Shown here piece by piece: positions 3,953 through 41,035 of a stretch of DNA of 64,000 nucleotides; the stretch's first letter is position 1; every line of letters begins with the position of its first letter. Source of the DNA: Heterodontus francisci (lineage: Eukaryota); contig NW_027140807.1 in assembly GCF_036365525.1 (NCBI RefSeq), forward strand, positions 1,054,001-1,118,000, in the 5' to 3' direction. The translations under genes and the position numbers were made by a program. The notes beneath the pieces are model-generated. The model ran no database searches. It had not been told where the DNA came from and saw only the letters and a list, made by a program, of their open reading frames with translations.

Positions 3953-4044
3953 TCTGCACGTTGTCTGTTCATGGGATCTTGCCTTTTAGAAAGTGACTGC
4001 CACTGTTCCTACATTACAGCAGTGGCCGTACTTCGAAACAGTAG

Positions 4045-4392: not shown

Positions 4393-4589
4393 CCTCACCC
4401 AGGAGTCAGTCCCCAGCTCCACTGACTAGTCCCACAGTGTTGGTGTTCCTGCTCTTCGCTCCAGCTGCAAGGAATTTACAGCCCGACACGTCCTTGCCGA
4501 CCTTTTTGGTCCACACGAACGTCGTTCCACGCCCTCTTCATCTCGCCCCCAGCCACATCTCCTTCTGTTCCTCTCTCCCTCATGTCCTA

Positions 4590-5275: not shown

Positions 5276-5739
5276 TCCACTGGAAGCTTATCCTAAAATT
5301 GGAAAATCAGTGGAAAGAAGAGAGTTGAGTCTTGTGAGAAGCCACATGAAGATTCAAGCAAGTGATTCAGGTTTGCACAACACCTCCCTCCCTGATGGGA
5401 AACCCACGCCCCTCTCTCTACCATTGGCTGCCAGTAGTTGTTGTTGCATTTGTTGGTATAATTTTGAAGTTGTTGTTGTATTTGTTATTGTATTTGCTGG
5501 TGTTTTTCTCCAACTGAGGTTGTTGAATTTGCTGGTGTTTGAATCTCCTGCTGATCTGTTGTTGAATTTGTTGACGCTGTTCTCCTGCTGAGGTAGTTGT
5601 TGTTTTTGTTGGTGTTTTCCCTGCTGAGGTTTTTGTCGTACTTCTTGTTTCCTTCCCTGCTTAAGTTGTTGAATTTTTTTTATGTTGAGGTTGTTGTTTT
5701 AATTTGCAGCTTTTTTCCCTGCTGAGGTTATTTTCCGTT

Positions 5740-10458: not shown

Positions 10459-10492
10459 ATGTGGACTCTGCTGATCATTCTGGGTTACCTGA
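10459..10492 (+). CDS. Gene A signal-peptide exon (MWTLLIILGYL)
   Basis: Acceptor ccctttcCAG at 10441-10443, ATG in AAGATGT context, phase-1 donor GTGAGT. Splicing gives MWTLLIILGYLNSALT-DPC, a typical cleavable signal. Confidence 0.85.
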
Positions 10493-13400
10493 GTGAGTAA
10501 CTTTCATTCTCGACAAAGTTCACCCCCAGTACAACTGGAACAAGCTGTGCTTATTCACGCCATTAAATAGAATAATCTCCCAAATCTGATTGAAGAAATG
10601 TCTGACACGGCAGGGAAGGAGATGATTGGAGGTCTGACTGTTAGTTTAAAAGAGCAGACGGAGGTGGAGAGGCAGAAAGGTTTAGGAGGCCAGACATCTT
10701 GAAGCCACATCAGACAGTGTTGGAGGAAAGGGAGTGGAGGGAAGTTCGACAGGAGGCTTGGGTCAGAGAAACAGAGAGTTGGTGAAGATTACAGAAATGA
10801 GGTGGGAGAGGCCGTAGAGGTCATGAAAGAATTTGAACAGGAAGATGGAAATTGTACATCAAAGGCATTTGCAGCTGTGAACCAATGTGTGTCAGTGAGC
10901 ACAGGGGTGATGTGTGACTTAAACTTTCTGCAAGATAACATACAACAGCAGTGTGTTGGAGGAGACCTGACTTCTGGAAAGTGGAAGCTGGGAGGCTGGC
11001 CAGGAGAGGATTAGAAGATTTGATTCTCTCGAAGGTTGAGGGTTTTAGGTAGAGGATTGGCTGAGGCAAAATCAGTGATGACGGATATTAAGGAGGTTGT
11101 AATTGGCTGCCTTTGTGATGAAGAGGCTTCAGGGAAGGAAGCTGGGCTCAGTCGGAAGCAGGGCCGTGTGCTGATGAGAAATAGGAGAGGGGCAAGATAG
11201 ATTCTCGGGGTACCCTCGAGGTAACAGTGCCGGAGTGGGTAGGGAAGACACTGCAGGAGATTCTCTGGCTGAGACGAGGTTGGGTTGAGTGGAAGTAGGT
11301 GAGAGCAGTTCCACCCAGCTGGACTTGGAACGAGAGGTGTTGGCAGAGGGTAATGTGGTGAATTGTGTCAAAGACTGCCGACAGTTCGAGAAGGATGATC
11401 AGAAACAGTATTCCTGACTTGGCTCTTGCAGCTTCACTGCTGCTCAAACCCTTCACCAGTTATTTGGCACCTCTAGACTTGACTATTCCAAAGACCTCCT
11501 GGCTGATCTCTCACATTCCACCTTCCGTACATTGAGGTCATCCAATATGATACTGCCCAAGTCCCATTCTCCTTTCATCTCCGTGCTCACTGACCGACAC
11601 TGGCTCCCGGTTCAGCAAGGCCTGGATTTCAATATTCTCACAATCGTTTTTAGATCCTTCCATCACCTCGCCGTTCCCTACTGCTGAAATCATCTCCAGC
11701 CCCACAACCCTCAGAGATCTCTGCGCTACTGTAATTCAGGCCTCTTGAGTATTCCCGATTTGAATCCCTTCCACCATTGGCAGCTGTGCCTTCACCTGCC
11801 GAGGCTTAACGCTATGGAATTCTATCCCTCAACTTCTCCGTCTCTCCACCTCTCTTTCATCCTTTCAGAGACTCCTTAAAACCTCCTCTTTGACATTGCA
11901 TTTGGCCACCTGCCCTACCAGCTGCTTCTGTGGATCAGTGTCAGTTCGGGATGGTAACACACCGATGAAGTGCCTCGGGGCATTTTATTCCATCAAAGGC
12001 ACGACATAAATGCATATTGTTGTTGGTTTTGGGACTAAACGTTCCCTCTCCAGGACCCACCATTCACATTGGGTCGCTTGTTCTCCACCTGGCAGTTCTC
12101 GCTCCTCCTCCACTTTACATCTTTCCGACTGGGACGAAGTGAAGCTGAGATATTTACTGCTTTCTGTTCCCTGAGAGCTGGTGGTTAATCTAGAATAGGG
12201 AGGACTGTCTGTGAGCAGTGAGTTAGAGGGGGAGGCTGAGCTGGGAGACAGATGGAAACCCAGTTTAGAGAAGGAGGAAATTTTCCAGCTTTAATCTGGG
12301 GGGTTTTGACCAGGGCGGAGGTTGTAACTGAGATTATTGGTATTTTGGGATGGTGAAAGGCGCTGTGTAACATTAACTGTACTTTATATTAACATTAAAC
12401 ATCTTTGTGTCACTCAATCACAGACTCTGCACTCACTGACCCGTGTGTAAATCATACAGTCCTGGACCAGCCCTGGAGGAGCATCGATTGTACAGGGACT
12501 GAGTGCTCCGGTCAGGTGAAGTGTGATCGGTATCTTGTTCAAGGATGGTACAGATTTAACAGGTAATGTAAAGGAACAAATTCTGGGTAAATCAGTTAAT
12601 GAGGGAGGATTAAGGGATTTCCCCCAGTTTCTGGTACTCTCTGCTGGTACCAGTCTCTCTAAAAATTAATATTTACCATCAGTTCAAGGACTGACTCTGT
12701 GATTGTTGTTTCAGTTCTGGTGGATGGAAGATTCCGGACACTGTTGTCCCAGATAGCCACTGCTCCACAAAGCGTCCAGGCTGGTTACAGGGTAATTTCA
12801 GCCTTTATAATATCAGATTTACATTCACTGTCCAGCACTGTTCACATGGGTTACATTCTTCAATATTTATAAACTCTCATTTCAGGTTCCCATCCCAGTG
12901 TGGGACAGGGGGAAGTAACACGGACAGTTTGTTTCAACAGGGATGGAAATCGCTGCCACAGGACCCAGAAAATAAAGATCAAAAACTGCAGCAGTTATTT
13001 TGTTTATGCGCTGAAGCCTCCACCTGTCTGTAACGCTGCTTATTGCACAGGTAGATTGCTGTTTGTATATGGTGCAGATGGGTGATTCTGGGATGTCCCG
13101 TGTCACCCACAAAAATGAGACAGTTTACGCACTGCCCTCCTTTTTGTGAGGGACACAGTGAATATCGGATCTGTAAAACAGGGTGAACTCTTCACTAAAA
13201 CTCTAGGGAACTGAACCAGATGCTCGCTGTCTGGAGAGAGGGCTGGCATGTCTGGGTATTATTCTGTCAAGAATGCACTTGAGGATTCAGGTTTTCTAGT
13301 GAGTGTCAGACACAGCAGCAGGATCCTGACAGACTCTATGTGAAGGGCAGTCACTCTCGTCTCACCTCTTGAGTTCCACTCTTTTGTCCGTGTTTGAACC

Positions 13401-16400
13401 ACAGCTATGATGAGGTCTGGAGCTGAGTGACCCTGGCGGAGCACAAACTGACCATCACTGAACAGGTAATTGCTGAGCAAGTATCATTTGATAGCACTGT
13501 CGATGACACCTTCCATCATTTGACTGATGATAGAGAGTAGACTGATGGGACGGTAATTGGGTGGGTTGAACTTGCCCTGCTTTGACTTGTCATGCTTTTT
13601 ATGCACAGGACATGCCTGAGCAGATTTACACATTGCAGGGTAGATGCCAGTGTTGTAGCTGTACCAGAATAGCTTGGCTCAGGATGCAACAAGTTCTGGA
13701 GCACAGGTCTTCAGTACTACTTCAGGGATATTGTCAGGGCCCATAGCATTTGCAGTATTCAATGCCTTCAGTCATTTCTTGATATCACCTGGAGTGAATC
13801 GAATTGTCATCTGTGATGTTGGGGACTTCAGGAGCAGGCCGAGGTGGATCATCTACTCGGCACTTCTGGCTGAAGATGGTTGCAAATGCTTGAGTCTTAT
13901 CTTTCGCACTAATGTGCTGGGCTCCCTGATCTTTGAGGATGGGGATATTTCTGGGGCCTCCTCCTCCAGTTAGTTGTTTAATTATCTACTGCCCTTTATG
14001 ACTGGATGTGGCAGGACTGCAGAGCTCAGATCTGATCCGTTGGTTATGGGATCGCTTAGCTCTGTCTATCACATGCTGCTTCTGCTGTTTGGCACGCAGA
14101 TTGTCCTGGGTTGTAGTTTCACCAGGCTGACACCTCATTTTGAGGTATGCCTTGTGCTGCACTTTACATGCCCTCCTGCACTTTTCATTGAACCATGTTT
14201 GGTCTCCTGGCTTGATGGTCATGATAGAGTGGGGAATATACCGGACCATGAGGTTACAGATTGTGGTTGAGTACAATTCTGCTGCTGCTGTTGTTCCCAC
14301 AGCACCTCATGGATGCCCATTGTTGCATTGCTAGATTTGTTTGAATCTATCCCATTTAGCATGGTGATAGTGCCAGACAACACGATGGATGGTATCCTCA
14401 ATGTAAAGGCGGGACTTCGTCTCCACAAGGACTGTGCGGTGGTCACTCCTACCAATACTGTCATGGATATGTGGCAGGCAGATTGGTGAGGATGAAGTCA
14501 AGTATATTTTCACCTCTTGTTGATTCTGTCATCATCTGCCACAGTCGCAGACTAGCAGCTATGTCCTTTAGGACTCAGCCAGCTCGGTCAGGAGTGGGCG
14601 GCAGTGATTGAGGGGAGTGGGATGTAGTGAATGTGGGGAGTGGGATGTCGTGACTGAGGGGAGGGGGATGCAGTGACTGAGGGGAGTGGGATGCAGTGAC
14701 TGAGGGGAGTGGGATGCTGTAATTGAGGGAAGTGGGATGTAGTGACTGATGAGTGAGATGTGGTAACTGATGGGAGTAGGATGTAGAGATGCGGGGAGTG
14801 AGGTGCAGTGCTTGAAGGGAATGGTACGGTATGATTCGGTGGACCTTGTGTGGTAACATAGAGAAGTGGGATGCAGTTATTGAGGGGAGTAGGATGCCGT
14901 GACTGAGTGGAGTGGGATACACAGACTGAGGGGAGTGGGATGCAGTGACTGAGGGGAGCTGGATGCAGTGACTGAGGGGAGTGTGATATAGTGACTGAGG
15001 GGAGTGGAATACAGTGACTGTGGGGAGTGTGATGCAGTGACTGAGGGGAGTGTGATACAGTGACAGTGGGGAATGGGATACAGTGACTGAGGGGAGTGTG
15101 ATACAGTGACTGAGGGGAGTGTGATACAGTGACTGAGGGGAGTGGGATACAGTGACTGAGGGGAGTGGAATACAGTGACTGTGGGGAGTGTGATACAGTG
15201 ACTGAGGGGAGTGTGATACAGTAACTGAGGGGAGTGTGATCCAGTGACTGTGGGGAGTGGGATACAGTGACTGAGGGGAGTGGAATACATTGACTGAGGG
15301 GAGTGGAATACAGTGACTGTGGGGAGTAGGATACAGTGACTGAGGGGAGTGTGATACAGTGACTGAGGAGAGTGTGATACAGTAACTGAGGGGAGTGGAA
15401 TACAGTGACTGAGGGGAGTGGAATACAGTGACTGTGGGGAGTGGGATGCAGTGACTGAGGGGAGTGTGATCCCTTACATTTATCTTCACATCCTCCTCGC
15501 TTTCACTTGTCACTTGAACTTTTCCCAGTTCTGATGTCAGGTCACATATTAACATTAAACATCTTTCTGTCACTCAGTCACAGACTCTGCACTCACTGAC
15601 CCGTGTGTAAATCACACAGTCCTGGACCAGCCCTGGAGAAGCAGCGATTGTGATGTCACTGGGTGCTCCGGTCAGGAGAAGTGTGATGATAATCTTCACT
15701 TCGGATGGTACCGATTTAAAAGGTAATGTAAAGGAACAATTTCAGGGTAATCTAGTCAATATGGGCAGAGTAAGGGACTTCCCCCAGTTTCTGGTCCTAT
15801 TTGCTGGTACCAGTCTCTCTAACAGTTAATATTTACCATCAGTTCAGGGACTGACTCGATGATTGTTATTTCAGTTCTGGTGGATGGAAGATTCCGGAGA
15901 CTGCTGTCCCACATCATCGCTGCTCCACAAATGTTACAGGCTGGTTACAAGGTAATTTCAGCCTTTATAATATCAGATTTACATTCACTGTCCAGCACTG
16001 TTCACATGGGTTACTGTCTTCAATATTTATAAACTCTCATTTCAGGTTCCCATCCCAGCGTGGGACAGGGGGAAGTAACACGGACAGTTTGTTTATACTG
16101 GGGTAGAAAACACTGCGACAAGGTCCATGAGATAAAGATCAAAAACTGCAGCAGTTACTTCGTTTATGAGTTGAAGTCGTTGTTTCGTTGTGCTGCGTAT
16201 TGTACAGGTACTTTGATGCTTCTATATCATCCAGAGGGTGAAACTGGGATGTCCCGTGTCACCCACAGAAATGAGACAGTTTACTCGCTCCCCTCCTTAT
16301 TGTCAGGGACACAGTGAATAAAGGATCTGAAACACAAAGTGTACTTCACTGAAACTCTAGGGAACTGAACCAGACTCTGCTGTCCCTGTCTCTCAGGCAC

Positions 16401-19400
16401 TCTGATCCCTGCAGTGTTCATGGCTCACGTCAGGTCCCCACTGCAGTGCTGGGCACCTCACACTCCCTCTCCAGGAAACAATGTTCATGAAGAGTCGGAT
16501 TGGATGGTCGAGTGTTTGATAAAGATGAAAATCTGACACTGTCTGGACTCGAGTACTTAATACATGAGCTCTTTGGGTTTTCTCCACTCTGCCCTCTTCC
16601 TTTATTACAGATCCAGAGACTGTCGCAACTGAGGAACCCGAGGAACAAACAACTCGAGTATCCACGAGGGGATCATCGTCTACCCCTGCGGTGTCTGGAA
16701 CATCAGGTACCCCCCTTGTGGGTCCATTCGAAACAGGTTCCACACCCAATGTTACATCATAGAAGATCAGTCCTGGAGATCATCCAGTCTCTTACTGAGG
16801 GAAGTGGGATGGAGTGATTGAGGGAATTGGGATGAGTGACTGAGGGGAGTGGAATGTAGTGACTGAGGGGAGTGGATGCGGTGACTGAGGGGAGTGGGAT
16901 GGGGTGACTGAGGGGAGTGGGCTGGGGTGACTGAGGGGAGTGGGATGTAGTGACTGAGTGGAGTGGGATGTAGTTACTGAGGGGAGTGGGATGTGAACAA
17001 AGAACAAAGAACAAAGAAAATTACAGCACAGGAACAGGCTCTTCGGCCCTCCAAGCCTACGCCGATCCAGATCCTCTATCTAAACCTGTCGCCTATTTTC
17101 TAAGGGTCTGCATCTCTTTATTTCCTGCCCATTCATGTATCTGTCTAGATACATCTTAAAAGACGCTATCGTGCCCGCGTCTACCACCTCCACTGGCAAT
17201 GCATTCCATGCACCCACCACCCTCTGCGTAAATAACTTTCCACGCATATCTCCCCTAACCTTTTCCCCTTTCTCTTTGAACTCGTGTCCCCTTGTAATTG
17301 AATCCCCCACTCTGGGAAAAAGCTTCTAGCTATCCACCCTGTCTATACCTCTCATGATTTTGTGCACCTCAATCATGTCCCCCCTCAAGCTCCTTCTTTC
17401 TAATGAAAATAATCCTAATCTACTCAACCTCTCTTCATAGCTAGCGCCCTCCAAACCAGGCAACATCCTGGTGAACATCCTCTGCACCCTCTCCAAATCA
17501 TCCACATCCTTTTGGTAATGTGGCGACCAGAACTGCACGCAGTATTCCAAATGTGGCCGAACCAAAGTCCTATACAACTGTAACATGACCTGCCAACTCT
17601 TGTACTCAATGACCCGTCCGATGAACGAAAGCATGCCGTATGCCTTCTTGACCACTCTATTGACCTGCGTTGCCACCTTCAGGGAACAATGGACCTGAAC
17701 ACCCAAATCTCTCTGTACATCAATTTTCCCCAGGACTTTTCCATTTACTGTATAGTTCACTCTTGAATTGGATCTTCCAAAATGCATCACCTCGCATTTG
17801 CCCTGATTGAACTCCATCTGCCATTTCTCTGCCCAACTCTCCAATCTATCTATATTCTGCTGCATTCTCTGACAGTCCCCTTCACTATCTGCTACTCCAC
17901 CAATCTTAGTGTCGTCTGCAAACTTGCTAATCAGACCACCTATACTTTCCTCCAAATCATTTATGTATATCACAAACAACAGTGGTCCCAGCACAGATCC
18001 CTGTGGAACACCACTGGTCACACGTCTCCATTTTGAGAAACTCCCTTCCACTGCTACTCTCTGTCTCCTGTTGCCCAGCCAGTTCTTTATCCATCTAGCT
18101 AGTACACCTTGGACCCCATGCGCCTTCACTTTCTCCATCAGCCTACCATGGGGAACCTTATCAAACGCCTTACTGAAGTCCATGTTTCCGACATCTACAG
18201 CCCTTCCCTCATCAATCAACTTTGTCACTTCCTCAAAGAATTCTATTAAGTTGGTAAGACATGACCTTCCCTGCACAAAACCATGTTGCCTATCACTGAT
18301 AAGCCCATTTTCTTCCAGATGGGGATAGATCCTATCCCTCAGTATCTTCTCCAGCAGCTTCCCTACCACTGACGTCAGGCTCACCGGTCTATAATTACCT
18401 GGATTATCCCTGCTACCCTTCTTAAACAAGGGGGCAACATTAGCAATTCTCCAGTCCTCCGGGACCTCACCCGTGTTTAAGGATGTAGCAAAGATATCTG
18501 TTAAGGCCCCAACTATTTCCTCTCTCGCTTCCCACAGTAACCTGGGATAGATCCCATCCGGACCTGGGGACTTGTCCACGTTAATGCCTTTTAGAATACC
18601 CAACACTTCCTCCCTCCTTAGGCCGACTTGACCTAGAGTAATCAAACATCTGTCCCTAACCTCAACATCCGTCATGTCCCTCTCCTCGGTGAATACCAAT
18701 GCAAAGTATTCATTTGGAATCTCACCCATTTTCTCTGACTCCACACATAACTTTCCTCCTTTGTCCTTGAGTGGGCCAATCCTTTCTCTAGTTACCCTCT
18801 TGCTCCTTATATATGAATAAAAGGCTTTGGGATTTTCCTTAACCCTGTTTGCCAATAATATTTCATGACCCCTTTTAACACTCTTAATTCCTCGTTTCAG
18901 ATTGTGCCTACAATCCCGATATTCTTTCCAAGCTTCGTCATTCTTCAGCCGCCTAGACCTTATGTATGCTTCCTTTTTCCTCTTAGCTGGTCTCACAATT
19001 TCACCTGTCATCCATGGTTCCCTAATCTTGCCATTTCTATCCCTCATTTTCACAGGAACATGTCTCTCCTGCACACTAATCAACCTCTCTTTAAAAGCCT
19101 CCCACATATCACATGTGGATTTACCTTCAAACAGCTGCTCCCAATCTGCATTCCCCAGCTCCTGCCGAATTTTGGTATAGTTGTCCTTCCCCCAATTTAG
19201 CACTCTTCCTTTAGGACCACTCTTGTCTTTGTCCATGAGTATTCTAAACCTTACGGAATTGAGATCACTATTCCCAGAGTAGTCCCCTACTGAAACGTCA
19301 ACCACCTGGCCCGGCCCATTCCCCAACACCAGGTCCAGTATGGCCCCTTCCCGAGTTGGACTATTTACATACTGCTCTAGAAAACCCTCCTGGATGCTCC

Positions 19401-22400
19401 TTACAAATTCTGCTCCATCTAGACCTCTAACACTAAGTGAATCCCAGTCAATGTTGGGAAAATTAAAATCTCCTATCATCACCACCCTGTTGCTCTGACA
19501 GCTTTCCATAAACTGACTGAGTGGACTGTGATGTCGTGATTGAGGGGATTGGGATGTAGAGAATGCGGGGAGTGGCATGCAGTGATTGAGGGGAGTGGGA
19601 TGATGTAATTGAGGGGAGTGGGATGTAGTGAAGGAGGGGAGTGGGATGAAGTAATTGAGGGGAGTGGTATGCAGTGACTGAGGGGAGTGGACTGATGCAA
19701 TTGAGGGGAGTGTGATTGAGCGACTGAGGGGAGTGGGATGCAGTGACGGAGGGGAGTGGGATGATGCAGTTGAGGGGAGTGGGATGATTCAATTGAGGGG
19801 AGTGGGATGCCGTGACTAAGGGGAGTGGGATGCAGTGACTGCGGGGCGTGGGATGCATTGACTGAGGGGAGTGGGATGCAGTGACTGAGGGGAGTGGGAT
19901 GATGTAATTGAGGGGAGTGGCATGCAGAGACTGAGAGGAGTGGGATGCAGTGGCTGAGGGGAGTGGGATGGAGTGACTGAGGGGAGTGGGATGGGCTAAC
20001 TGAGGGGAGTGGGATGCAGTGACTGAGGTGCATGGGATGCAGTGACTGAGGGGAGTGGGATGATGTAATTGAGGGGAGTGGGATTTCGAGACTAAGGGGA
20101 TTGAGAAGATATGATTGAAGGGAGTGTGATTCAATGACTGAGGGCAGTGACATTTTATGACTGGGTAAAATGTAATGCAGTTCCTGTGCCAACTGGGATA
20201 CAGTGAGTGTGGACATGTGGATTGTCTCACAATGGTTTTTATATACACTAGCATCTGTGATTTACTGTACTCTAATCTATCCAGTTCGAACTTTCTCTCA
20301 CTCCTTCCCTCCCCCATGTTTCTTTCCCTTTATTACACATCCAGAGACTTCAACAACCTCAAGAACCAAGGAGCAAACAACTCCACAATCCATTGAGAAA
20401 GCACCATCTAACCCAATCGATACTTTCACCTCAGGTATCAGTTTTATGTTGTTCAATCAGGACGGGTTGATTCTTACACTGACTGCCTGATTTGGGTGAA
20501 TGGAATCTACCGCACAGGAAGAGGCCACTCGGCCCCTCTTGCTATCCTCTTCATCTAACCTTTTCCTTCCTTTTCCTTTCTCCCTCAGGTGTTTAACCAG
20601 ATTTACCTTAAATTTCATTTCCCTCGACCATTCAGGATTAATTCTACATTCTCACTACACCTTGGTGTACTTGTCCATAGTTCACTGAAGGCAGCAGCAC
20701 AGGTAGATCATGTGGTTTGGAAGGTATATGGGATACTTGCCTGTCTTAGCCGAGGCACAGAATATAAGAGCAGGGCGGTTATGATGGACCTGTACAAAAC
20801 GCTAGTTTGGCCACAGCTGGAGTACTGAGAACAGTTCTGGGCACCACAATATAGAAAGGATGTGATTGCACTGGAGAGGGTGCAGAGGAGATTCACCAGG
20901 AGGTTGCCTGGGCTGGAGCATTTCAGCTGAGAAAAGAGGCTGGATAGGCTATGGTTGTTTACCTTAGAGCAGAGAAGGCTGAGGGGGGACCTGATTGAGG
21001 TATACAAAATTATGAGGGGCATTGATCGGTTAGATTGGAAGAAACTGTTTCCCTTAGCGGAGGGGTCAGTAACCAGGAGGAATAGACTTAAGATAAAAGG
21101 CAAGAGGTTTATAGGCGATTTAAGGAAACAGATTTTCACCCTGAGGGTGGTTGGAATCTGGAACACACTGTCTGAAGAGGTGGTAGAGGCATGAACCCTC
21201 ACAACATTTAATAAGTATTTAGATAAGCACTTGAAACGCCGCAGCATACATGATTACGGGCCAAGTGCTGGAAAATGGGATTAGAATAGCGACGTGCTTG
21301 ATGATCGGCATGGACACGATGGGCCGAAGGGCCTGTTTCCATGCTGTATAATTGTATGAGTCTAGGGCTGTGACGCACTTTTCAGTAAAGAGGCTTCCTC
21401 TGAAATCACCACTGGATTTACTTGTGACTGTTTTATTTTCTATCCCTCTCTCTCCACCCTCCTCTCCCACTGCCTCTTTCTGCACTTCCTGTCAGTATCT
21501 CTTTTGCTCTCTGTGTATCTTTCTCTTTATATCTCTATATTTGCTCTCTCTCTCTGTCTGCCATTTTCACTTAGTCTCTGTCTATCTCTATCTGACAATT
21601 TCGTTTTCCCTCTGTCTCTCTCTTTATCTCTGTAACTCACTGCTCTCCCCATTTCGCTTCTTCTCTCGCTGTCTGTATCTGTTGCTCTCACTCTCGGACT
21701 CTTTCTTGATCTCTCACATTTTCTATCGCTCTCTTTCTTCTCATTTTTCTCTCCCTCTGTTGCCCTCTTTCACTCTGTCTCCCACTCTCACTGTCTCTAA
21801 CTCTCACACGTTATCTCTCACTCACAGTGACTGAGGGCAGTGGGATGCATTGACTGAGGGGAGTGGGATGCATTGACTGAGGGGAGTGGGATGTAGTGAC
21901 TAAGAGGAGTGCAATGTAATGGAAGAGGATGGTGGGGTGTAATGACTGAGAAGAGTGGGATAGACTGATGGAGGTGAATGGAATGCAATGACTGAGGGGA
22001 CTGGGATGGAGTGGCTGAGCGGAGTTGTGTGAAAGGTTTGAGGGGAGTGAGTTGTAGTGAATGAGGGGAGTGGAATACTGTGACTGATATTAGATCCAGA
22101 GAGTGAGGGAGAGTGGGAGGCAGTGACGGAGGGGCTTGGGATGCCGTGACTGAGGGCAGTGCGATGGCCTGACTGAGGGAGTGGGATGTTGTGACTGAGG
22201 GAAGTGGGAGTGCGAGTTAGAGCCTGAGAGTAGTGGGATGTAGTGACAGAGGGAGGTGGGATGCAGTGACTGAGGGGAGTGGGATAGACTAACGGAGCTG
22301 AGTGGGATGTAGTGACCTATGGGAGTGGGATGCGGTGACTGAGGGGAGTGGAATGTAGAGACCGAGGGTTGTGGGTTACACAGGCTGAGGGGAGTGTAAC

Positions 22401-25400
22401 ACAGTGACTGAGGGGAGAGTGATACAGTGACTGAGGGGAGTGGGATACAGCGACTGAGGGGAGTGGGATACAGCGACTGAGGGGAGTGGGATACAGCGAC
22501 TGAGGGGAGTGGGACACAGCGACTGAGGGGAGTGGGATACAGTGACTGAGTGTAGTGGGATACAGTAATGTCGTGATCAGGATGGAAGATGATGGATTTA
22601 TAAAGATTGATATCTCACTTTCTCCTGACACTAGTACCATCCTGTTGAAATGTTGTGTTTTTCTCCATCTCTCACTCTGCAATGTTTCCCTCCCTTTATT
22701 ACAGAGCCCATGACTTCCCAAACTCAGGAATCCGAGGAACAATCGACTGGAGAATCCACTGAGGTTTCATCCTCTATCCCAGTGGGCTCTGGAACCCCAG
22801 GTATCTGCCGTGCCGAATTATAATTACAGAAAGATGGAATCAGAGACTGGTTACAGCACAGAAAGAGGCCATTCAGCCCATCGTCACCGTGCCAGCTCTC
22901 TGCCAGAGCAATCCACCTACTCGCACTCCTGCCATTTCCCCATCACCCAGCAGATTGTTTCTCCTATGATAATTTTCCAATTCCCTTTTGAAAGCCTCAA
23001 TTGAACCTGCCTCCAGCGCACTCACAGGCAGTGCATTCCAGACCCTAACCACTCGCTGTGTGAAAAGGTTTTCCTGTCTCTGTTGCTACTTTTACCACTC
23101 ACCTAAAACCGGTGTCCTCTGGTTCTGGATTCTACCACCAATGGGAACAGTTTCTCCCTGTCAGCTCTGTCCACATCCCTCGTGATTTTGAACACCTCGA
23201 TCAAATCTTCTCTTAATCTTCTCTTCTCCAGGGAGAACAGCCCCATCTTCTCCAATCTATCCAAGTAACTGACGTCCCTCATCCTGGGAACCATTCTTGT
23301 AAATCATCTCCGCACCCTCTCGAATACCTTAACGTCCTTCCTAAGTATTCACCGCTCTCTGTCTTGCCACCTTCAATGATTTGTGCACACGTACGCCCAG
23401 GTCCCTCTGCCCCTGCACCCCCTTTACAATTGTATCCTTTATTTTATATTGCCTCTCCTCGTTCGTCCGACCAAAATGAATCACTTCACAATTCTCTGCA
23501 TTAAATTTCATCTGTCACTTGCCTGCCCATTCCACAGGTCTGTCTATGTCCACTTGAAGTCCATCACTATCCTTCTCACTGTTCACAATACTTCCAGGTC
23601 TTGTGCCCTCCACAACTTTTGAAATTCTGCCCTGTACACACAAATACAACACATTAATATACATCAAGAAAAACAGGGTTCGATCAATATTAAAGAGTAA
23701 AACACAGATGCACAGAGAATTAGGAGGGACAGATAACACTGGAGTAGAAAAGAGTAACGTATTGGACTGGGACAGTGTAAGAGGGATGGTGATGAGCTGA
23801 AAATTCAGTTTAATGTGTGTGTATATGGATGCACGGAGAGTGGTAAATAAGGTTGTTGAGCTGCAGGCCACGTGGAAATATGCTGTTGTGGCAATAACCG
23901 AGTCCTGGTTCTAAGAGAGGCAGGACTGGGTAGTGAATATTCCTGACAAGGTGTTCAGGAAAGAGAGGGAAGGAAGGAAAGGAGGAGGGGCATCAGTATT
24001 GTTTAAGGGGAGAATTACAGTGCTGGAAGAAGATGATGTCGGAGAGGAACCAAGGATAGAATCCATCAGATTAAAGTGAAACAACGAAAGAAATACCATG
24101 ACCTTTCTGGGTGTATGTTATAGGCCAACAACTAGTGGGAAAGATATAGATGAACAGATTTGCATAGAGCAACCAAGAGATGCAAGAGTTAAAGTGTAGA
24201 TATATCATTGGGCTATACTTATCTGAATATACTCTGGAATAGTAATAGTGTAAACGGCAGAGAGGGACAAGAGTTTCTCGAGTGTGTTCAGGAGAATTTC
24301 CTACGTCAGTTTGTTTCAAGTCCAACGAGGAAGGAGGCATTGCTGGATCTGGTTCTGGGAAATGAGGTTGGACAAGTGAATTAAGGGTCAGCCGGGGAAC
24401 ATTTGGGGACAGTGACCAGCGTATCATGTGGTTTAGGTTGGTAATGGAAAAGGACAAGGAGAAATGCGGAGGAAAGATAATTCAGTGAGGGAGAACCAAT
24501 CTCAATAGAGTGAGAACAGATCTGACCCAAATAATCTGGAATCATATTACAGATTCCCACACTGTGACGCCTGAAGTGCTCATTCCAAGAGACGCATCCA
24601 GTCTCTTAATGATGGAGTGTGGGGCAATGATAGAGGGCAGTTGGAAAACAGTGACAGAGGGGAGTGGGATGAAGTGACTGAAGGGACTGTGATACAGTGA
24701 CTGAGGGGATGGGACACAGTTACTGAGGGGAGTGTGATACAGCGACTGAGGAGAGTGTGATACAGCGACTGAGGGGAGAGTGAATCAGTGACTGAGGGGA
24801 GTGTGAAACAGTGACTGAGGGGAGTGTGATACATTGACTGAGGGGAGAGCGATACAGTGACTGAGGGGAGTGGGATCGGGCGACTGAGATGAGTGTGATA
24901 CACTGACTGAGATGAGTGTGATGCAGTGACTGAGGGGAGTGTGATAGAGACAGAGGGGAGTGTGACGCCGTGACTGAGGGGAGTTTGACACAATAATGTA
25001 GTGAACAGATGGAAGACTATGGTTTTATAAAGATTGATATCTGACATTCTCCTGACACTAGTACCATCCTGTTGACCTATTGTGTTATCCTCCATGTCTC
25101 ACTCTGCAATGTCTCCCTCCCTTTATTACAGAACCCGTGACTTACCAAACTCAGGAATCCGAGGAACAATCGACTGCAGAATCCACTGAGGGGCCCTCCT
25201 CTATCCCAGCGGGCTCTGGAAGCTCAGGTATCTGCCTTGTGGGGTTATCATCGCAGAATCATGGAATCATAAACCGGTTACAGCACAGAAAGAGGCCGTT
25301 CAGACAATCGTCACCGTGCCAGCTCTCTGCCTGAGCAACTCAACTGCTCCCACTCCTGCAATTTCCCCATCTCCCTGCAGATTGTTTCTCCTGTGATAAT

Positions 25401-28400
25401 TATCCAATTCCCTTTTGAAAGCCTCAATTGAACCTGCCTCCAGCACAGTCTCAGGCAGTGCATTCCAGACCCTAACCACTCGCTGTGTGAAAAGGTTTTC
25501 CTGTCTCTGTTGCTACTTTTACCACTCACTTAAAGCCGGTGCCCTCTGGTTCTGGATCCTCCCACCAATGGGAACAATTTCTCCCTGTCTACTCTGTCCA
25601 CATCCCTCGTGATTTTGAACATCTCGATTAAATCTCTTCTTAATCTTCTCTTCTCCAGGGACAAGAGCCCCAGCTTCTCCAATGTATCCATGTAACTGAC
25701 GTCCCTCATCCCAGGAACCATTCTCGTAAATCATTTCCGCACCCTCTCGAATACCTTCACATCCTTCCGAACGTATTAACCGCTCTCTGGACCTGTCTTG
25801 CCACCTTCAATGATTTGTGCACACGTACGCCCAGGTCCCTCTGCCCCTGCACCCCCTTTGCAATTGTATCCTTTATTTTATATTGCCTCTCCTCGTTCGT
25901 CCGACCAAAATGAATCACTTCACAATTCTCTGCGTTAAGTTTCATCTGCCACTGTCTGCCAATCCCACCAGCCTGTCTATAACCTCCTGACGTCTATCAC
26001 TATCCTCCTCACAGTTTACAATACTTCCAGGTTTTGTGTCATCTGCAAATTTTGAAATTGTGGCATGTACGCCCCAGTCTATGTCATTAATATACACCAG
26101 GGAAAACAGGGGTCCGAGCAATATTACAGATCAAAACACAGATGCACAGAGAATTAGGAGGGACAGATAACACTGGAGTAGAAAAGAGTAACGTATTAGA
26201 CAGGGACAGTGTAAGAGGGAAGGTGATGAGCTGTAGATTCAGTTCAATGTGTGTGTATATGAGAATGCAATGAGAGTGGTAAAAAAGGTTGTTGAGCTGC
26301 AGGCGCAGATAGCCATGTGGAAATATGATGTTGTGTCAATAACAGAGTCCTGGCTCTAAGAGGGGCAGGACCTGGTAGTGAATATTCCTGACTACAATGT
26401 GCTCAGGAAAGGGAGGGATGGAAGGAAAGGAGGAGGGGTATCAGTATTGATAAAGAGGAACATTACAGTGCTGGAAAGAGATGATGTCGGAGAGGAACCA
26501 AGGATAGAATCCATCAGATTAGAATGAAACAAGGAAAGAAATACCATTACCTTTCTGGGTGTATTCTATAGGCCAACAAGTAGTGGGAAAGATATAGAGG
26601 AACAGATTTGCATGGAGCAACCAAGAAGTGCAAGAGTTAAAGTGTAGATATATCGTTGGGCTTTAGTTATCTGAATATAGACTGGGATAGTAATAGTGTA
26701 AAGGGCAGAGAGGGACAAGAATTTCTAGAGTGTGTCCAGAAGGATTCCCTCCGTCAGTTTGTTTCCAGTCCAACGAGGAAGGAGGCATTGCTGGATCTGG
26801 TTCTGGGAAATGTGGTTGGATAAGTGAATTATGGGTCAGTCGGGGAACATTTAGGGGACAGTGACCATCATATCATGTGGTTTAGGTTGGCAATGGAAAA
26901 GGACAATGAGAAATCCGGAGGAAAGATAATTCATTGAGGGAGAACCAATCTCAGTAGAGTGAGAACAGATCTGACCCAAATAAACTGGAATCATATTATA
27001 GACACACATAGTGTGATACCTGACGTGCTCAGTCTCAGTGACCCATCCAGTCTCTTACTGATGGAGTGTGGGGAAATGACAGAGGGCAGTGGGATATAAT
27101 GACCGAGGGGAGTGGGATGTACTGTCTGAGGGGTGAGGGATGTAATGACTGAGGGGAGAGGGATATAGTGACTGTGGGCAGTGGGATATAGTGAGTGAGG
27201 GGAGAGGGATGCAGTGACTGAGGGGAATGGGACATCGTGACTGAGGGGAGTTGGATATAGTGACTGTGGGCAGTGGGACATAGTGATTGAGGGTACTGTG
27301 ATAAAGTGACTGAGGGGAGTATGATACAGTCACTGAGGGGAGTGGGATGCTGCGACTGAGGGCTGTTTGATAGTGTGACTGTGGGGAGTGGGATACAGTG
27401 ACTGAGAGGAGTGTGATACAGTGACTGAGAGAGTGTGATGCAGTGACTGAGGGGCGTGTGATGCAGTGACTGAGGGGAGCGTAATACAGCGACTGAGGAG
27501 AGTCTGATACAGCGACAGAGGGGAGTGAGATACAGCGACTGGCGTGTGTGTGATACAGTGACTGAGGTGAGTGTGATACAGTGAGTGAGGGGAGTGTGAT
27601 ATAGGGACTGAGGTGATTGTGATTGAGTGACTGAGGGGAATGTGATACAGTGACTGAGGGGAGTGTGATATAGTGACTGAGGTGAGTGTGATGCAGTGAC
27701 TGAGGGGAGCGTGACGCCGTGACTGAGGGGAGTGTGACACAGTAATGTATTGAACAGGATGGAAGATTATGGTTTTATAAAGATTGTTATCTGTCATTCT
27801 CCTGACACGAGCACCATCCTGTTGACCTGATGTGTGTTTCTCCATGTCTCACTTGGCAATGTCTCCCTCCCTTTATTACAGAACCCGTGACTTCCCAAAC
27901 TCAGGAATCCGAGGAACAATCGACTAGAGAATCTACTGAGGTTTCATCCTCCACCCCAGCGGGCTCTGGAAGCTCAGGTACCTGCCTTGTGCGGTTATCA
28001 TCGCAGAATCATGGAATCAGAGACTGGTTACAGCACAGAAAGAGCCCGTTGAGCCCATCGTCACTGTGACAGCTCGACGCCTGTGCAACTAACCTACTCC
28101 TACTCCTGCTATTTCCCCGTCGCACTGCAGATTGTTTCGCCAATGACAATTTTCCAATTCCCTTTTGAAAGCCTCAATTGAACCTACCTCCAGCACACTC
28201 TCAGGCAGTGCATTTCAGATCCTAACCACACGCTGTGTGAAAAGGTTTTACTGTCTCTGTTGTAATTTTTACCACTCACCTAAAACCGGTGCCCTCTGGT
28301 TCTGGATCCTCCCACCAATGGGACTTAGGGGTGTGGGGCATAGTTACTGGGGGAGAGGGATGTAGTGACTGAGGGGAGAAGGTTGCACTGACCGAGGTGA

Positions 28401-31400
28401 GTGGGATATAGTGACTGAGGGCAGTGGGACATTGTGACTGAGGGCAGTGGGATATAGTGAGTGAGGGGAGAGGGATGTAGTGACTGAGGGGAGTGGGACA
28501 GAGTGACTTAGGGTAGTGGGATATAGTGAGTGAGGGGAGAAGGATGTAGTGACTGAGGGGAGTGGGACATAGTGACTGAGGGGAGTGGGATATAGTCATT
28601 GAGGGCAGTGGGACATAGTGACTGAAGGCAGTGGGATATAGTGATTGAGGGCACTGGGATGTAGTAACTGAGCGGAGTGGGACGTAGTGACTGAGGGCCG
28701 TGGGATATAGTGACTTAGGGCAGTGGGATGTATTGACTTTGCGGAGTGGGATGTGGTAACTGCGGAGAGTGGGATGTAGTGACTGAGGTGAGTGGGATAC
28801 AGTGACTGAGGGGAGTGGGATACAGAGACTGAGGGTAGTATGATGCAGTGTCTGAGGGGAGTGGAATACAGCGACTGAGGGGAGTGTGATGCAGTCACTG
28901 AGGGTAGTGTGATACAGTGTCTGAGGGGAGTATGAAACAGTCACTGAGGGGAGTGTGATGCAGCGACTGAGGGTAGTGAGATACAGTGTCTGAGGGGAAC
29001 TTGATACAGTGACTGAGGGTAGTGTGATGCAGTGACAGAGGGGGTGTGATACAGTGAGTGAGGGGAGTGTGATACAGTGACTGAGGGGAATGTGATACAG
29101 TGACTGAGGGGAGTGTGATACAATGACAGAGGAAGTGTGATACAGTGACAGAGTGGAGTCTGACACAGTGAGTGAGGGGAGTGTGATACAGTGACTGAGG
29201 GGAGTGTGATGCAGTACAGAGGGAAGTGTGATACTGTGACTGAGCGAGTGTGACACAGTGACTGAGGGGAGTGTGATACAGTGTCTGAGGGGAGTGTGAT
29301 ACAGTGTCTGAGGGGAGTGCGATACAGTGACTGAGGGGAATGTGATACATGACTGAGGGGAGTGTGATACAGAGTCTGAGGGGAGTATGAAACAGTCACT
29401 GAGGGGAGTGTGATGCAGCGACTGAGGGTAGTATGATACAGTGTCTGAGGGGAACTTGTTACAGTGACTGAGGTTAGTGTGATGCAGTGACAGAGGGAGT
29501 GTGATACAGTGACAGAGGGGAATGTGATACAGTGAGTGAGGGGAGTGTGATGCAGTGACTGAGGGGAATGTGATACAGTGACTGAGGGGAGTGTGATACA
29601 ATGACAGAGGAAGTGTGATACAGTGACAGAGTGGAGTCTGACACAGTGAGTGAGGGGAGTGTGATACAGTGACTAAGGGGAGTGTGATGCAGTGACAGAG
29701 GGAAGTGTGATACTGTGACTGAACGAGTGTGACACAGTGACTGAGGGGAGTGTGATGGAGTGACTCAAGGACTGTGATACAGTGTCTGAGGGGAGTAGGA
29801 TACGGTCACTGAGGGGAGTGGGATGCAGCGACTGAGTGTACTGTGACACCGTGACTGAGGGGAGTATGATACAGTCACTGAGGGGAGTGGGATGCAGCGA
29901 ATGAGGGTAGTGTGATCGAGTGACTGTGGGGAGTGGAATACATTGACTGAGAGGAATGTGATATAGTGACTGAGGGAAGTGTGATACAGTGACTGAGAGA
30001 GTGTGATGCAGTGACTGAGGGGAGTGTGATGCAGTGACTGAGGTGAGTGTGATACAGTGACTGAGGTGAGTGGGATACAGTGAGTGAGGGGAGTATGATA
30101 TAGTGACTGAGGTGAGTGTGATGCAGTGACCGCTGGGAGTGTGATGCAGTGACTGCTGGGAGTGGGATACAGTGAGTGAGGGGAGTATGAGATAGTGACT
30201 GAGGTGAGTGTGATGCAGTGACCGCTGGGAGTGTGATACAGTGACTGAGGGGAGTGTGACGCAGTAATGTAGTGAACAGGATGGAAGATAATGGTTTTAT
30301 AAAGATTGTTATCTGTCATTCTCCTGACACGAGCACCATCCTGTTGACCTGATGTGTTTTTCTCCATGTCTCACTTTGCAATGTCTCCCTCCCTTTGTTA
30401 CAGAACCCGTGACTTCCCAAACTCAGGAATCCGAGGAACAATCGACTAGAGAATCTACTGAGGTTTCATCCTCCACCCCAGCGGGCTCTGGAAGCTCAGG
30501 TACCTGTCATGTGGGGTCATCATCGCAGAATCATGGTATCAGTGACTGGTTACAGCACAGGAAGAGGCCATTGAGCCCATCGTCACCTTGACAGCTCTAT
30601 GCCTGTGCAACTCATCTACTCCCACTCCTGCAATTTCCCCGTCGCACTGCAGATTATTTCTCCAATGACAATTTTCCAATTCCCTTTTGAAAGCCTCAAT
30701 TGAACCTGCCTCCAGCACACTCTCAGGAAGTGCATTTCAGATCCTAACCACTCGCTGTGTGAAAAGGTTTTCCTGTCTCTGTTGTGACTTTTACCACTCA
30801 CCTATATCCGGTGCCCTCCAGTTCTGGATCCTCCCACCAATGGGACTTAGGGGAGTGGGGCATAGTTAGTGGGGGAGATGGATGTAGTGACTGAGGGGAG
30901 AAGGTTGCACTGACCGAGGTGAGTGGGATATAGTGACTGAGGGCAGTGGGGCATAGTGACTGAGGGCAGTGGGATATAGTGAGTGAGGGGAGAGGGATGT
31001 AGTGACTGAGGGGAGTGGGACAGAGTGACTTAGGGTAGTGGGTTATAGTGAGTGAGGGGAGAGGGATGTAGTGACTGAGGGGAGTGGGATGTAGTTACTG
31101 AGGGCAGCTGGACATAGTGATTGAGGGCAGTGGGATGTCGTGACAGAGGGGAGTGAGACATAGTGAATGAGGGGAGTGGGATATAGTGAGTGAGGGGAGA
31201 GGGATATAGTGACTGAGGGGAGTGGGATATAGTTACTGAGGGCAGTAGGACATAGTGATTGAGGGCAGTGGGATATAGTCATCGAGGGGTGCGGAACATA
31301 GTGACTGAGGGGAGTGGGATATAGTCATTCAGGGGAGTGGGATATAGTCATTGTGGGCAGTGGGACATAGTGACTGAGGGCAGTGGGACATAGTCACTGA

Positions 31401-39907: not shown

Positions 39908-40534
39908 AGGAGTTTGGACATGTCAACAAGCATCCAACACGTGTGATCCAGTCTCTGTGTGTTTTGCATCCTCACTCAATCACTGTGCCATCTTATCTTC
40001 ACCTTGTTTAACTCAAGGAAATTGTCAGCAAAGGGTTAATCTCCGACTAGAAGTATGCTAATGTTATACTGTAATTGGTGTGTCTTTATACTGCAGGGTT
40101 GTGGGAGCTTTAAGCTATTGCTTTGTTAAATAGAGAAGTACGATCCCATTTGTATCCAGTGACCACTGGTCAGCTGAACCCAGACTAACCTGACAGCTCT
40201 GGCCAGTTACAGGATGAAGTGATCTCAGGTTTAATGAGGGAGTTTCTTTAAAGATCTACCATTGAGTAGAGGTCCCTAAGCTTCATGGAGCTGTCAGCAC
40301 TGAGAATTGGGGCAAGGAAAACAGTTCGTCCTTGTCCAAGGAGAACCTCAGGGTAGATAACATCTTTTAAATTGAGGGTTCATGCAGAATGGGGGATCGG
40401 TTGATGCTGAACTTTGCAGAATCAAAATATATTGAAAAGGAAAGCTTTCATTGAGTACAAAGCATTTATGTGTGGCATATGTCAAATGTTTAATAACAAA
40501 GGAAGGGAGTTATACTGAGCTCAGGAACCTAATG

Positions 40535-41035
40535 CTGACAACACTCCATCTCAATAACACCTCTGTGAACGCTTCCATTGTCTCTGCTCTGCCACACTGC
40601 TTGTCTAACATCCAATACTGGATGAGCAGATATTTTCTCCTACTAAATATTGGGAAGACTGAAGCCATTGTCTGTGATCCTCGACACAAATGTCATTCTT
40701 GGACCACCGACACCATCTCTGGTACCTGTCTGAAACTGATCAAGACAGTTTTTAGCCTTTGTTGTTGTGTTTGACCCCGAGATGAGTTTCCGACCACATA
40801 TCCACACCATCACCAAGACTGTCCATTTCCACCTCCATACCATCTCTCGACTCCGACCCTGCCTCAGCTCATCTGCTGCTGAAACACTAATCCGTGTCTC
40901 TGTTACCTCGAGCCTGGACTATTCCAATGCTCTCCTGGCCAAGCTCACATCTTTCACACTTCCTGATCTTATCCTCATACAAACATTTGCTGTGTCTTAA
41001 CTCACTCAGAACCTTGTTCACCCATCCCCCTGAAA
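40535..41035 (+). mobile_element. L2 LINE RT fragment
   Basis: CLSNIQYWMSRYFLLLNIGKTEAIV..FDPEMSFRPHI..HLHTISRLRPCLS..SLDYSNALL. Confidence 0.85.

What the first reader, a model, noticed from the sequence alone, without database searches (positions are those of the whole stretch)
12424..16207. CDR-like hypervariable loops in the D8C domains
Seen: between domains A1 and A2, the 13 codons after TRTVC read FNRDGNRCHRTQK vs LYWGRKHCDKVHE. Twelve of the 13 codons change amino acid, ten of them by a single base, and only Cys is kept. The preceding GSHPSVGQGEVTRTVC differs by one silent base, and the adjacent 94-bp intron by 2 bases. Other variable patches are IDCTGTEC/SDCDVTGC, RYLVQ/DNLHF/QNLAQ, DSHCSTKRP/HHRCSTNVT/DSHCSTRAS and PPPVCN/SLFRC/PPPDCE. 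About 36 of 127 residues differ between A1 and A2, and 17 between A1 and gene B, mostly in the same patches. Caveat: A1 vs B also has about 10 silent changes, so whole-domain dN/dS may be below 1. Inference: site-specific diversifying selection on a ligand-binding surface, i.e. a germline-diversified binder repertoire.
Basis: partly seen in the sequence, partly recalled or inferred. Interest (0 to 1): 0.85.

Follow-up and report, generated by a model that had tools for sequence, protein, structure and literature searches.

The report
Hypervariable loops in shark D8C genes
Horn-shark genes related to the human gut and urinary anti-bacterial proteins GP2 and uromodulin form a large, expressed family whose rigid cysteine-rich head keeps its core constant while five surface loops change faster than neutral DNA, as expected of a germline-encoded recognition repertoire.

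Summary
The window (horn shark, Heterodontus francisci) holds three paralogous three-exon D8C/D10C modules, A1, A2 and B, whose amino-acid differences fall into five cysteine-bracketed patches.

I defined hypervariable codons independently, from 118 domains of other elasmobranchs or from rays alone (a separate clade). On those codons my own codon model gives omega of about 3-4, against about 0.26-0.46 for the rest of the domain.
- LRT p is 6e-6 to 4e-4, and 0 of 120 null simulations reached the observed value.
- Letting the patches have their own rate keeps omega near 3 (p 0.02-0.07; 3 of 120 simulations).
- The young pair A1-B alone gives 2.2-3.3 (p 0.015-0.08).

Patch nonsynonymous divergence is 3-5 times intron divergence. 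Framework synonymous divergence equals intron divergence, so conversion does not explain the contrast. One ~150-bp A1/A2 conversion tract is real and ends at the main patch.

The main patch is the tip of the beta-E/beta-F hairpin, which is conserved between human GP2 and UMOD. RNA contigs show several spliced paralogs expressed, and DNA contigs suggest dozens to hundreds of modules.

Binding, and clustering of the patches on one face, remain untested. The scan's first readers noted this gene family on other DNA of the same genome, but noted the hypervariability only on this same stretch.

The parts
10459..10492 (+). Gene A signal-peptide exon (MWTLLIILGYL plus 1 base), GT donor at 10493
   Evidence: Regex on the translated window. 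It matches the N-termini of P0009 and P0161 and the RNA loose end upstream of exon 1.
12424..12562 (+). A1 exon 1 (module positions 1-45). It holds patch 1 (12483-12503, between the new Cys22-Cys27 pair) and patch 2 (12510-12542). The family's usual acceptor at 12416-12417 is AA here.
   Evidence: An RNA contig covers 12497-12561 with 0 differences.
12715..12791 (+). A1 exon 2, holding patch 3 (12737-12778, around Cys62, the counterpart of GP2 C4)
   Evidence: Pfam D8C_UMOD hit on this piece. RNA depth lies on the exon only.
12886..13050 (+). A1 exon 3, holding patch 4 (12933-12971, tip of the beta-E/beta-F hairpin) and patch 5 (13008-13037)
   Evidence: Pfam PF23283 E 2.5e-6. AF2 secondary structure.
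12775..12935 (+). A1/A2 gene-conversion tract (end of exon 2, intron 2, first 16 codons of exon 3). It ends at patch 4.
   Evidence: 3 differences in 143 nt against 14-20% elsewhere (p 5e-8). Ten sites have A1=A2 but differ in B, although A1 and B are sisters elsewhere.
14591..15470 (+). 23-bp minisatellite in the A1-A2 intron. The same array precedes every stalk exon by about 110-200 bp.
   Evidence: TRF; exon positions.
15578..15722 (+). A2 exon 1 (true start 15578, acceptor AG at 15576-15577)
   Evidence: RNA joint 13050 to 12418. CTVTDSALT in P0009, P0161 and P0163.
15875..15951 (+). A2 exon 2 (patch 3 with an extra NVT sequon)
16046..16207 (+). A2 exon 3 (patch 4 at 16093-16131; patch 5 one codon shorter)
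16595..40997 (+). Rest of gene A: Ser/Thr/Glu-rich mucin-like stalk exons (about 16595, 20344, 22701, 25128, 27878, 30403, 31898, 36371) and C-terminal exons (about 37885-40997)
   Evidence: tblastn of horn-shark proteins P0009, P0033, P0163 and P0165 on the window.
58556..58589 (+). Gene B signal-peptide exon
60518..61149 (+). Gene B first D8C module (exons 60518-60662, 60815-60891, 60985-61149). It lies in a segmental duplicate of the gene A 5' region (7092-15470 matches 55160-63569 at 90%).

Best explanation
Genes A and B encode secreted proteins. Each has a signal peptide, then tandem D10C-type heads (the GP2/uromodulin D8C fold without its beta-hairpin, EGF or ZP parts), then a long acidic Ser/Thr-rich mucin-like stalk and a short C-terminal tail. 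They belong to a large elasmobranch-wide family that sits among TCR-beta V segments.

Within each 127-residue head, a disulfide-locked framework is under strong purifying selection. Five cysteine-bracketed loops, above all the tip of the beta-E/beta-F hairpin, accumulate amino-acid changes and indels faster than neutral DNA.

The diversity is germline. It arises in three ways: duplication of modules and genes, probably aided by the flanking minisatellites; positively selected point changes in the loops; and short-tract conversion that homogenises framework and introns and reshuffles patches between modules.

Most likely (inferred, not shown) the loops form a protein recognition surface for variable microbial or other ligands at mucosal surfaces. 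On this reading the family is a germline repertoire of binders on a decoy-type scaffold.
For: SHOWN: fold and family
- Pfam D8C_UMOD on exons 2 and 3 and on horn-shark proteins.
- The AF2 model of P0009 has pLDDT above 90 in both heads. It matches the GP2 decoy module 7P6R at rmsd 1.8 A over 122 columns, 43% identity. phmmer gives E 2.5e-30.

SHOWN: selection
- Framework omega is 0.03-0.12.
- With hypervariable codons defined from 118 non-Heterodontus domains, omega is 3.9 (LRT 20.6, p 6e-6).
- With a free patch rate, omega is 3.2 (p 0.022).
- Without patch 4 it is 4.1, without patch 5 it is 3.9, and for A1-B alone it is 2.5 (p 0.036).
- With codons defined from rays only, omega is 2.9-4.1 (p 5e-5 to 4e-4). 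Ray domains form a separate clade.
- Parametric bootstrap: 0 of 120 (shared rate) and 3 of 120 (free rate) null data sets reach the observed LRT.
- Patch pN is 0.54 against introns at 0.12-0.16 (A1-A2). It is 0.24 against 0.05 for introns and 0.10 for the flank (A1-B).
- Patch 4 has 14 nonsynonymous and 0 synonymous changes.

SHOWN: family-wide pattern
- The same positions are hypervariable within rays and sharks (Spearman 0.35-0.9).
- Indels are confined to the patches, and horn-shark paralogs are patch mosaics.
- Patch 4 is conserved between human GP2 and UMOD (AHWSGNCCFW against AHWSGHCCLW).

SHOWN: expression and numbers
- RNA contigs cover only the exons, with module-to-module and signal-exon joints and several distinct paralogs.
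- About 200 DNA contigs at least 80% alike lie on the 851 bp. Summed depth is 800-4850 against about 10-13 for single contigs.

INFERRED: the loops act as a binding surface, and the proteins act at mucosal surfaces.
Against: - Only three codon sequences could be analysed, with my own ML implementation and not codeml or HyPhy.
- With a free rate for the patches, significance is modest (p 0.02-0.07).
- Whole-domain dN/dS is below 1.
- Conversion is demonstrably active, so a single history per module is an approximation.
- No coordinates were available, so clustering on one face is untested.
- No ligand, tissue or binding data exist.
- The copy-number estimate comes from summed contig depth, which the tool warns is not a copy number.
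Confidence: 0.45

Rival explanations
1. The selection is the same but the logic is reversed. The heads are decoys or targets that microbes (adhesins, proteases, toxins) bind. The loops diversify to escape exploitation or to mimic varied host receptors, and do not themselves bind ligands.
For: GP2 and UMOD act as decoys for FimH through an N-glycan (PMC8930769). The sequon equivalent to GP2 N65 (CVNHT) is kept in all three modules, and a second sequon (NCS) is invariant. Omega above 1 fits an arms race in either direction.
Against: In GP2 and UMOD the decoy element is the glycan in the beta-hairpin/D10C groove. The beta-hairpin is absent here. The N9 sequon is not conserved across the family (entropy 1.8 bits; many domains have VTHT or VDHT). 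Nothing here tells the direction of binding.
Confidence: 0.2
2. There is no positive selection. The loops are simply unconstrained, and gene conversion homogenises the framework, exaggerating the contrast.
For: Whole-domain omega is 0.46-0.62. A conversion tract of about 150 bp is real. Paralogs are mosaics. The free-rate test is only p 0.02-0.07. There are three sequences only.
Against: Framework dS (0.23-0.29) is not below intron divergence (0.14-0.20), so the framework is not generally homogenised. Patch pN exceeds intron divergence 3-5 fold, and omega is about 3 even with a free rate. The A1-B pair is young and collinear over 8.4 kb and still gives omega 2.2-3.3. The main loop is conserved between GP2 and UMOD, so it is not intrinsically unconstrained.
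Confidence: 0.2
3. The patches are mutational hot spots (for example motif-targeted deamination or error-prone repair in a locus that is a target of somatic hypermutation in sharks), so both kinds of change are elevated there.
For: Synonymous differences look higher in patch codons (5.5 of 14.5 sites against 13.5 of 65.8). The fitted patch rate multiplier is 1.3-2. The genes lie in a TCR V array. Somatic hypermutation of shark TCR genes is from general knowledge, not tested here.
Against: Omega stays near 3 when the patch rate is free. Patch 4 has 14 nonsynonymous and 0 synonymous changes. The synonymous excess is small, and NG86 path averaging over multi-hit codons inflates it.
Confidence: 0.07

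Closest known systems
Decoy module (beta-hairpin + D10C, formerly 'D8C') of human GP2 and uromodulin (PDB 7P6R/7P6S/7P6T, 7PFP; PMC8930769)
   Same: Same fold (Foldseek rmsd 1.8 A over 122 columns, 43% identity) and Pfam PF23283. Four of the five D10C disulfides have aligned cysteines (C1-C8, C2-C9, C4-C10, C5-C7). A sequon sits at the position of GP2 N65. The proteins are secreted.
   Different: There is no beta-hairpin, no EGF domains and no ZP polymerisation module. The C3-C6 disulfide is lost and a new Cys22-x4-Cys27 pair appears. The heads are in tandem on a mucin-like stalk. There are dozens to hundreds of copies where mammals have one gene each. The beta-E/beta-F hairpin is conserved between GP2 and UMOD, where it carries the Bence-Jones light-chain epitope, but is the most variable part here.
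Germline-encoded, diversifying-selected secreted immune-type multigene families (amphioxus VCBPs, snail FREPs, sea-urchin 185/333 (Transformer), teleost NITRs). Comparison from general knowledge, not tested here.
   Same: It works like them: many paralogs, a conserved scaffold with hypervariable patches, diversification by duplication, selection and conversion, and several members expressed in one animal.
   Different: The scaffold is different (D10C, not Ig, fibrinogen or LRR). No evidence of somatic diversification. Ligands are unknown. The genes are embedded in a TCR-beta V array.
Cysteine-framework hypervariable peptides (conotoxins, some defensins). From general knowledge.
   Same: Invariant cysteines and framework, with inter-cysteine loops evolving at omega above 1.
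   Different: These are 127-residue domains in modular mucin-like proteins, not small processed peptides.

Membership tests
D8C/D10C domain (Pfam PF23283 D8C_UMOD) | Significant match to the family profile | tested here: met
   Exon 3 alone: E 2.5e-6, 28 bits against a cut-off of 27. Horn-shark paralog P0009: E 2.6e-24, two stretches.
D8C/D10C domain (Pfam PF23283 D8C_UMOD) | D10C fold as solved for GP2 | tested here: met
   AF2 model of paralog P0009 against 7P6R_A: rmsd 1.8 A, 122 columns, TM(target) 0.83. The model is of a paralog about 80% identical to A1 and B, not of the window's own spliced protein.
GP2/UMOD decoy module | N-terminal beta-hairpin with Cx-Cy disulfide packed on D10C | tested here: not met
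   The module starts 6-8 residues before C1. The alignment to 7P6R begins at Cy/C1. The signal-peptide exon, or the previous module, splices directly onto it.
GP2/UMOD decoy module | Five D10C disulfides C1-C8, C2-C9, C3-C6, C4-C10, C5-C7 | tested here: inconclusive
   The cysteines of four pairs align. C3 is replaced by Val and only one Cys stands at the C6/C7 doublet. Two extra cysteines (positions 22 and 27) appear. Pairing is inferred from alignment only.
GP2/UMOD decoy module | High-mannose N-glycan recognised by FimH (GP2 N65 / UMOD N275) | not testable with these tools
   The NHT sequon aligned with GP2 N65 is present in A1, A2 and B. The UMOD N275 site is absent. Glycan type is unknown.
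GP2/UMOD/OIT3 ZP-module proteins | C-terminal ZP polymerisation module | tested here: not met
   No ZP hit in P0009, P0161, P0163, P0165 or P0033. The downstream exons of gene A encode a stalk and a short tail.
Genes under diversifying selection | Omega significantly above 1 at a predefined set of sites | tested here: met
   Omega 2.9-4.1, p 6e-6 to 4e-4. With a free patch rate, p is 0.02-0.07. The bootstrap supports this. Three sequences only.
CDR-like binding loops | Variable residues in loops, length-variable, on a conserved scaffold | tested here: met
   17 of 26 hypervariable positions are in coil and 9 at the end of a hairpin. Family indels occur only after positions 27-35, 89-95 and 116-121.
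CDR-like binding loops | Loops contiguous on one face and contacting ligand | not testable with these tools
   Model coordinates are not returned. Disulfides C2-C9 and C4-C10 tie patches 2, 3 and 5 together, which is only an inference.

The most novel reading that the evidence does not exclude
Elasmobranchs have a previously undescribed germline repertoire of variable recognition proteins on the D10C scaffold. It is a third kind of hypervariable scaffold in vertebrates, beside Ig/TCR V domains and lamprey LRR cassettes. It is amplified to about 100 or more modules together with TCR-beta V segments and secreted on mucin stalks.
Probability: 0.35. Interest if true: 0.9.

Novelty: new variant of a known kind. 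Interest (0 to 1): 0.72.

Why it matters
GP2 and uromodulin are single-copy innate decoys in mammals. A shark family of the same fold has lost the polymerising part, multiplied massively, and places positively selected, length-variable loops on the hairpin that is conserved in mammals. That points to a new germline strategy of mucosal recognition at the base of the jawed vertebrates. The family sits physically inside an antigen-receptor V array. It also offers a small, disulfide-rigid scaffold with natural loop diversity. Four literature searches found no description of the family.

Tried and rejected
A multi-paralog codeml, MEME or GARD analysis was therefore impossible. I used the three modules of the window with site classes defined from other species.
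- Reads: read laying showed only 40 of 165 variant rows, so a per-site diversity profile across genomic paralogs could not be built from reads.
- Structure: model coordinates are not exposed, so spatial clustering of the patches was not tested.
- Spliced protein: the joined spliced protein of the window was not sent to any search or folding tool. Exons were searched one by one by reference, and a database paralog (P0009) was folded in its place. Joined codons were used only inside local scripts, for dN/dS and for a local HMM run against the fetched proteins.
- Post-hoc bias: the patch omega of 1.27 on patches picked from these same sequences was discarded as biased. It was replaced by independently defined sets.
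- Independence: I considered that shared d1/d2 history could make shark-derived site classes non-independent. I therefore repeated the tests with ray-only classes after showing that rays form a separate clade.
- Literature: searches for D8C/D10C in sharks, TCR loci or selection found nothing relevant. A shark skin-mucus proteome paper does not mention these proteins.
- RSS scan: it found only one convincing RSS.
Full report
**What is there**

The window is from the horn shark, Heterodontus francisci. Earlier notes say so, and the nearest database proteins are H. francisci RefSeq models.

blastn finds three copies of a 0.72-kb unit: A1 at 12380-13100, A2 at 15546-16256 (86% identical) and B at 60480-61195 (93%). 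Each unit is three short exons with AG/GT borders, phase 1-1, together 381 nt or 127 codons.

Exon 3 alone passes Pfam's threshold for D8C_UMOD (E 2.5e-6), and exon 2 hits the same model weakly.

In the 13 codons after TRTVC there are 14 base differences between A1 and A2. All are nonsynonymous.

**Gene models**

Signal-peptide exons (MWTLLIILGYL) lie at 10459-10492 for gene A and 58556-58589 for gene B.

Downstream of A2, gene A continues with Ser/Thr/Glu-rich stalk exons. Each is preceded by a 23-bp minisatellite. C-terminal exons run to about 41.0 kb.

Horn-shark paralogs P0009 and P0161 show the full layout: signal peptide, two D8C heads, an acidic mucin-like stalk and a tail of about 60 residues. 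They have no EGF, ZP or transmembrane part.

The RefSeq model nearest to gene A (P0033) starts in a spurious exon at 14492-14602 and omits A1.

The 5' part of gene A and gene B lie in a segmental duplication: 7092-15470 matches 55160-63569 at 90% identity.

**Expression and family size**

I laid contigs of four runs from the same animal on 12300-13150.

- Two runs behave as RNA. Depth lies on the three exons only and is zero in the introns.
- There are joints from exon 3 (13050) back to 12418, which is one module spliced to the next.
- A loose end upstream of exon 1 reads as the signal-peptide exon.
- Contigs of several distinct paralogs are present.
- One 65-nt contig is identical to A1 over patch 2.

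A2 therefore starts at 15578 and B at 60518. In A1 this AG is AA.

The two DNA runs gave about 200 and 182 distinct contigs at least 80% alike. Summed word depth was 800-4850 per bin, against about 10-13 for the lowest single contigs. With the tool's caveat that depth is not copy number, this suggests dozens to hundreds of modules.

**Is the contrast more than relaxed constraint?**

Patches picked from these same sequences give omega of about 1.3, but that choice is circular.

I therefore defined hypervariable codons from other species. A profile search found more than 1700 D8C proteins. Their closest members (60% identity or more) are all from sharks and rays.

The entropy of 118 non-Heterodontus domains picks 26 codons (at least 2.4 bits).

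On the three window modules, a GY94-type model with a shared synonymous rate gives:
- omega 3.9 for these codons and 0.26 for the rest (LRT 20.6, p 6e-6);
- 4.1 without patch 4 and 3.9 without patch 5;
- 2.5 (p 0.036) for the young A1-B pair alone;
- 3.2 (p 0.022) when the patch class has its own rate.

A1-A2 divergence might share history with the d1/d2 domains of other sharks. I therefore repeated the test with classes defined from rays only. Ray domains form a separate clade in a FastTree (support 0.82 and 0.98).
- Shared rate: omega 2.9-4.1 for the 15-26-codon sets (p 5e-5 to 4e-4); 2.1 (p 0.009) for the widest, 32-codon set.
- Free rate: 2.3-3.3 (p 0.03-0.07).
- A1-B alone: 2.2-3.3 (p 0.015-0.08) for the 15-26-codon sets; 1.7 (p 0.26) for the widest.

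A parametric bootstrap shows the tests are calibrated. None of 120 null data sets reaches the shared-rate LRT, and 3 of 120 reach the free-rate LRT.

Counting gives the same picture.
- A1-A2: patch nonsynonymous divergence is 0.54, against 0.12-0.16 in introns.
- A1-B: it is 0.24, against 0.05 in introns and 0.10 in the 8.4-kb flank.

**Conversion**

Framework synonymous divergence (0.23-0.29) is no lower than intron divergence (0.14-0.20). The framework as a whole is therefore not homogenised; it is conserved at the protein level (omega 0.03-0.12).

One tract is an exception. From about 12775 to 12935, A1 and A2 differ at 3 of 143 sites (p 5e-8). They share ten states against B, although A1 and B are sisters elsewhere.

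This short A1/A2 conversion stops exactly at patch 4.

Horn-shark paralog proteins are patch mosaics. For example, P0161 domain 1 carries an A2-type patch 1, and P0165 combines a d1-type exon 1 with d2-type exons 2-3. Conversion, or exon exchange, therefore also reshuffles patches.

**Structure**

AF2 on P0009 with 76 homologues gives both heads at pLDDT mostly above 90. Foldseek's only significant hits are the GP2 decoy module (7P6R, rmsd 1.8 A over 122 columns, 43% identity) and uromodulin. phmmer agrees (E 2.5e-30).

Compared with the published structure (PMC8930769), the shark head lacks the beta-hairpin. It keeps the cysteines of C1-C8, C2-C9, C4-C10 and C5-C7, has lost C3-C6, and has gained a Cys22-x4-Cys27 pair that frames patch 1.

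Patch 4 is the distal half of the long beta-E/beta-F hairpin (strands 81-90 and 93-105). The paper identifies this element as the light-chain (Bence-Jones) epitope of uromodulin.

That hairpin is nearly identical between human GP2 and UMOD. It is therefore not an intrinsically free loop, and its hypervariability here is a lineage-specific change of regime.

Of the 26 hypervariable positions, 17 are in coil and 9 at the hairpin end. Insertions and deletions across the family occur only in the patches.

Whether the patches form one face could not be computed, because coordinates are not returned. The disulfide map ties patches 2, 3 and 5 together, which is only suggestive.

**Reading**

Shown:
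- the fold;
- the tandem, ZP-less, mucin-stalk architecture;
- expression of several paralogs;
- a large family;
- hypervariable, length-variable loops at the same positions across elasmobranchs;
- omega above 1 on independently defined sites;
- a conversion tract.

Inferred: that the loops are a recognition surface, and that the proteins act at mucosal surfaces.

Rivals are an arms-race decoy or escape role, relaxed constraint plus conversion, and local hypermutability.

**Context and limits**

- A TRBV-like pseudo-V with a 23-RSS lies at about 5084-5300 on the minus strand. This agrees with first-reader notes that this family is embedded in a TCR V array elsewhere in the genome.
- The joined spliced protein was not sent to any search tool.

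Noticed in passing
window 12416-12423: The family's usual exon-1 acceptor (AG at 12416-12417 in A2, B and nearly all genomic contigs) is AA in A1. A1 can only use the AG 6 nt downstream, which is in frame and gives two residues fewer. The RefSeq model nearest gene A omits A1 altogether.
   Followed up: partly
window 14591-15470, 16794-16994, 19514-20149, 21825-22566, 24648-24992, 27077-27743, 28342-36361, 62665-64000: A 23-bp G-rich minisatellite (GGAGTGGGATRCAGTGACTGAGG) ends about 110-200 bp upstream of A2 exon 1 and of every stalk exon. One array is 8 kb long and interrupted by stalk exons. It looks like the substrate for unequal crossing-over that multiplies exons and modules.
   Followed up: partly
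window ~5084-5300, minus strand: TRBV-like V remnant (...DAQFNLESSSLWENHSAMHCCAWSL) followed by heptamer CACAGTG, a 23-bp spacer and nonamer ACAAAAACA. There are stop codons upstream, so it is probably a pseudo-V, antisense to the D8C genes.
   Followed up: partly
protein P0165 (H. francisci), compared with window modules: Its single D8C domain combines a d1-type exon 1 with d2-type exons 2-3. Because all modules share phase and exon layout, this could be a real hybrid module, cross-module alternative splicing, or an annotation artefact.
   Followed up: no
window 12792-12885 (intron 2): Intron 2 has summed contig depth as high as the most conserved exon parts (3100-3950, against 230-1000 in intron 1). 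It therefore seems unusually conserved across the whole family, either by frequent conversion or because it has a function.
   Followed up: no
P0009 residues ~415-465; window ~39022-39904: The C-terminal tail after the stalk folds confidently (pLDDT 87-94, helix 431-449) but matches no Pfam family. A short stretch (MFQDQCPHTK) weakly resembles uromodulin 498-507 in the ZP-C region, so it may be a ZP remnant.
   Followed up: no
proteins P0001, P0003, P0010 (corals), P0004 (Nematostella), P0007 (loach), P0040 (bullfrog): Proteins with 4-17 tandem D8C domains also exist in cnidarians, a teleost and a frog, some with EGF or ZP-N. Tandem D8C arrays are therefore ancient or recurrent. Their variability was not examined.
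   Followed up: no
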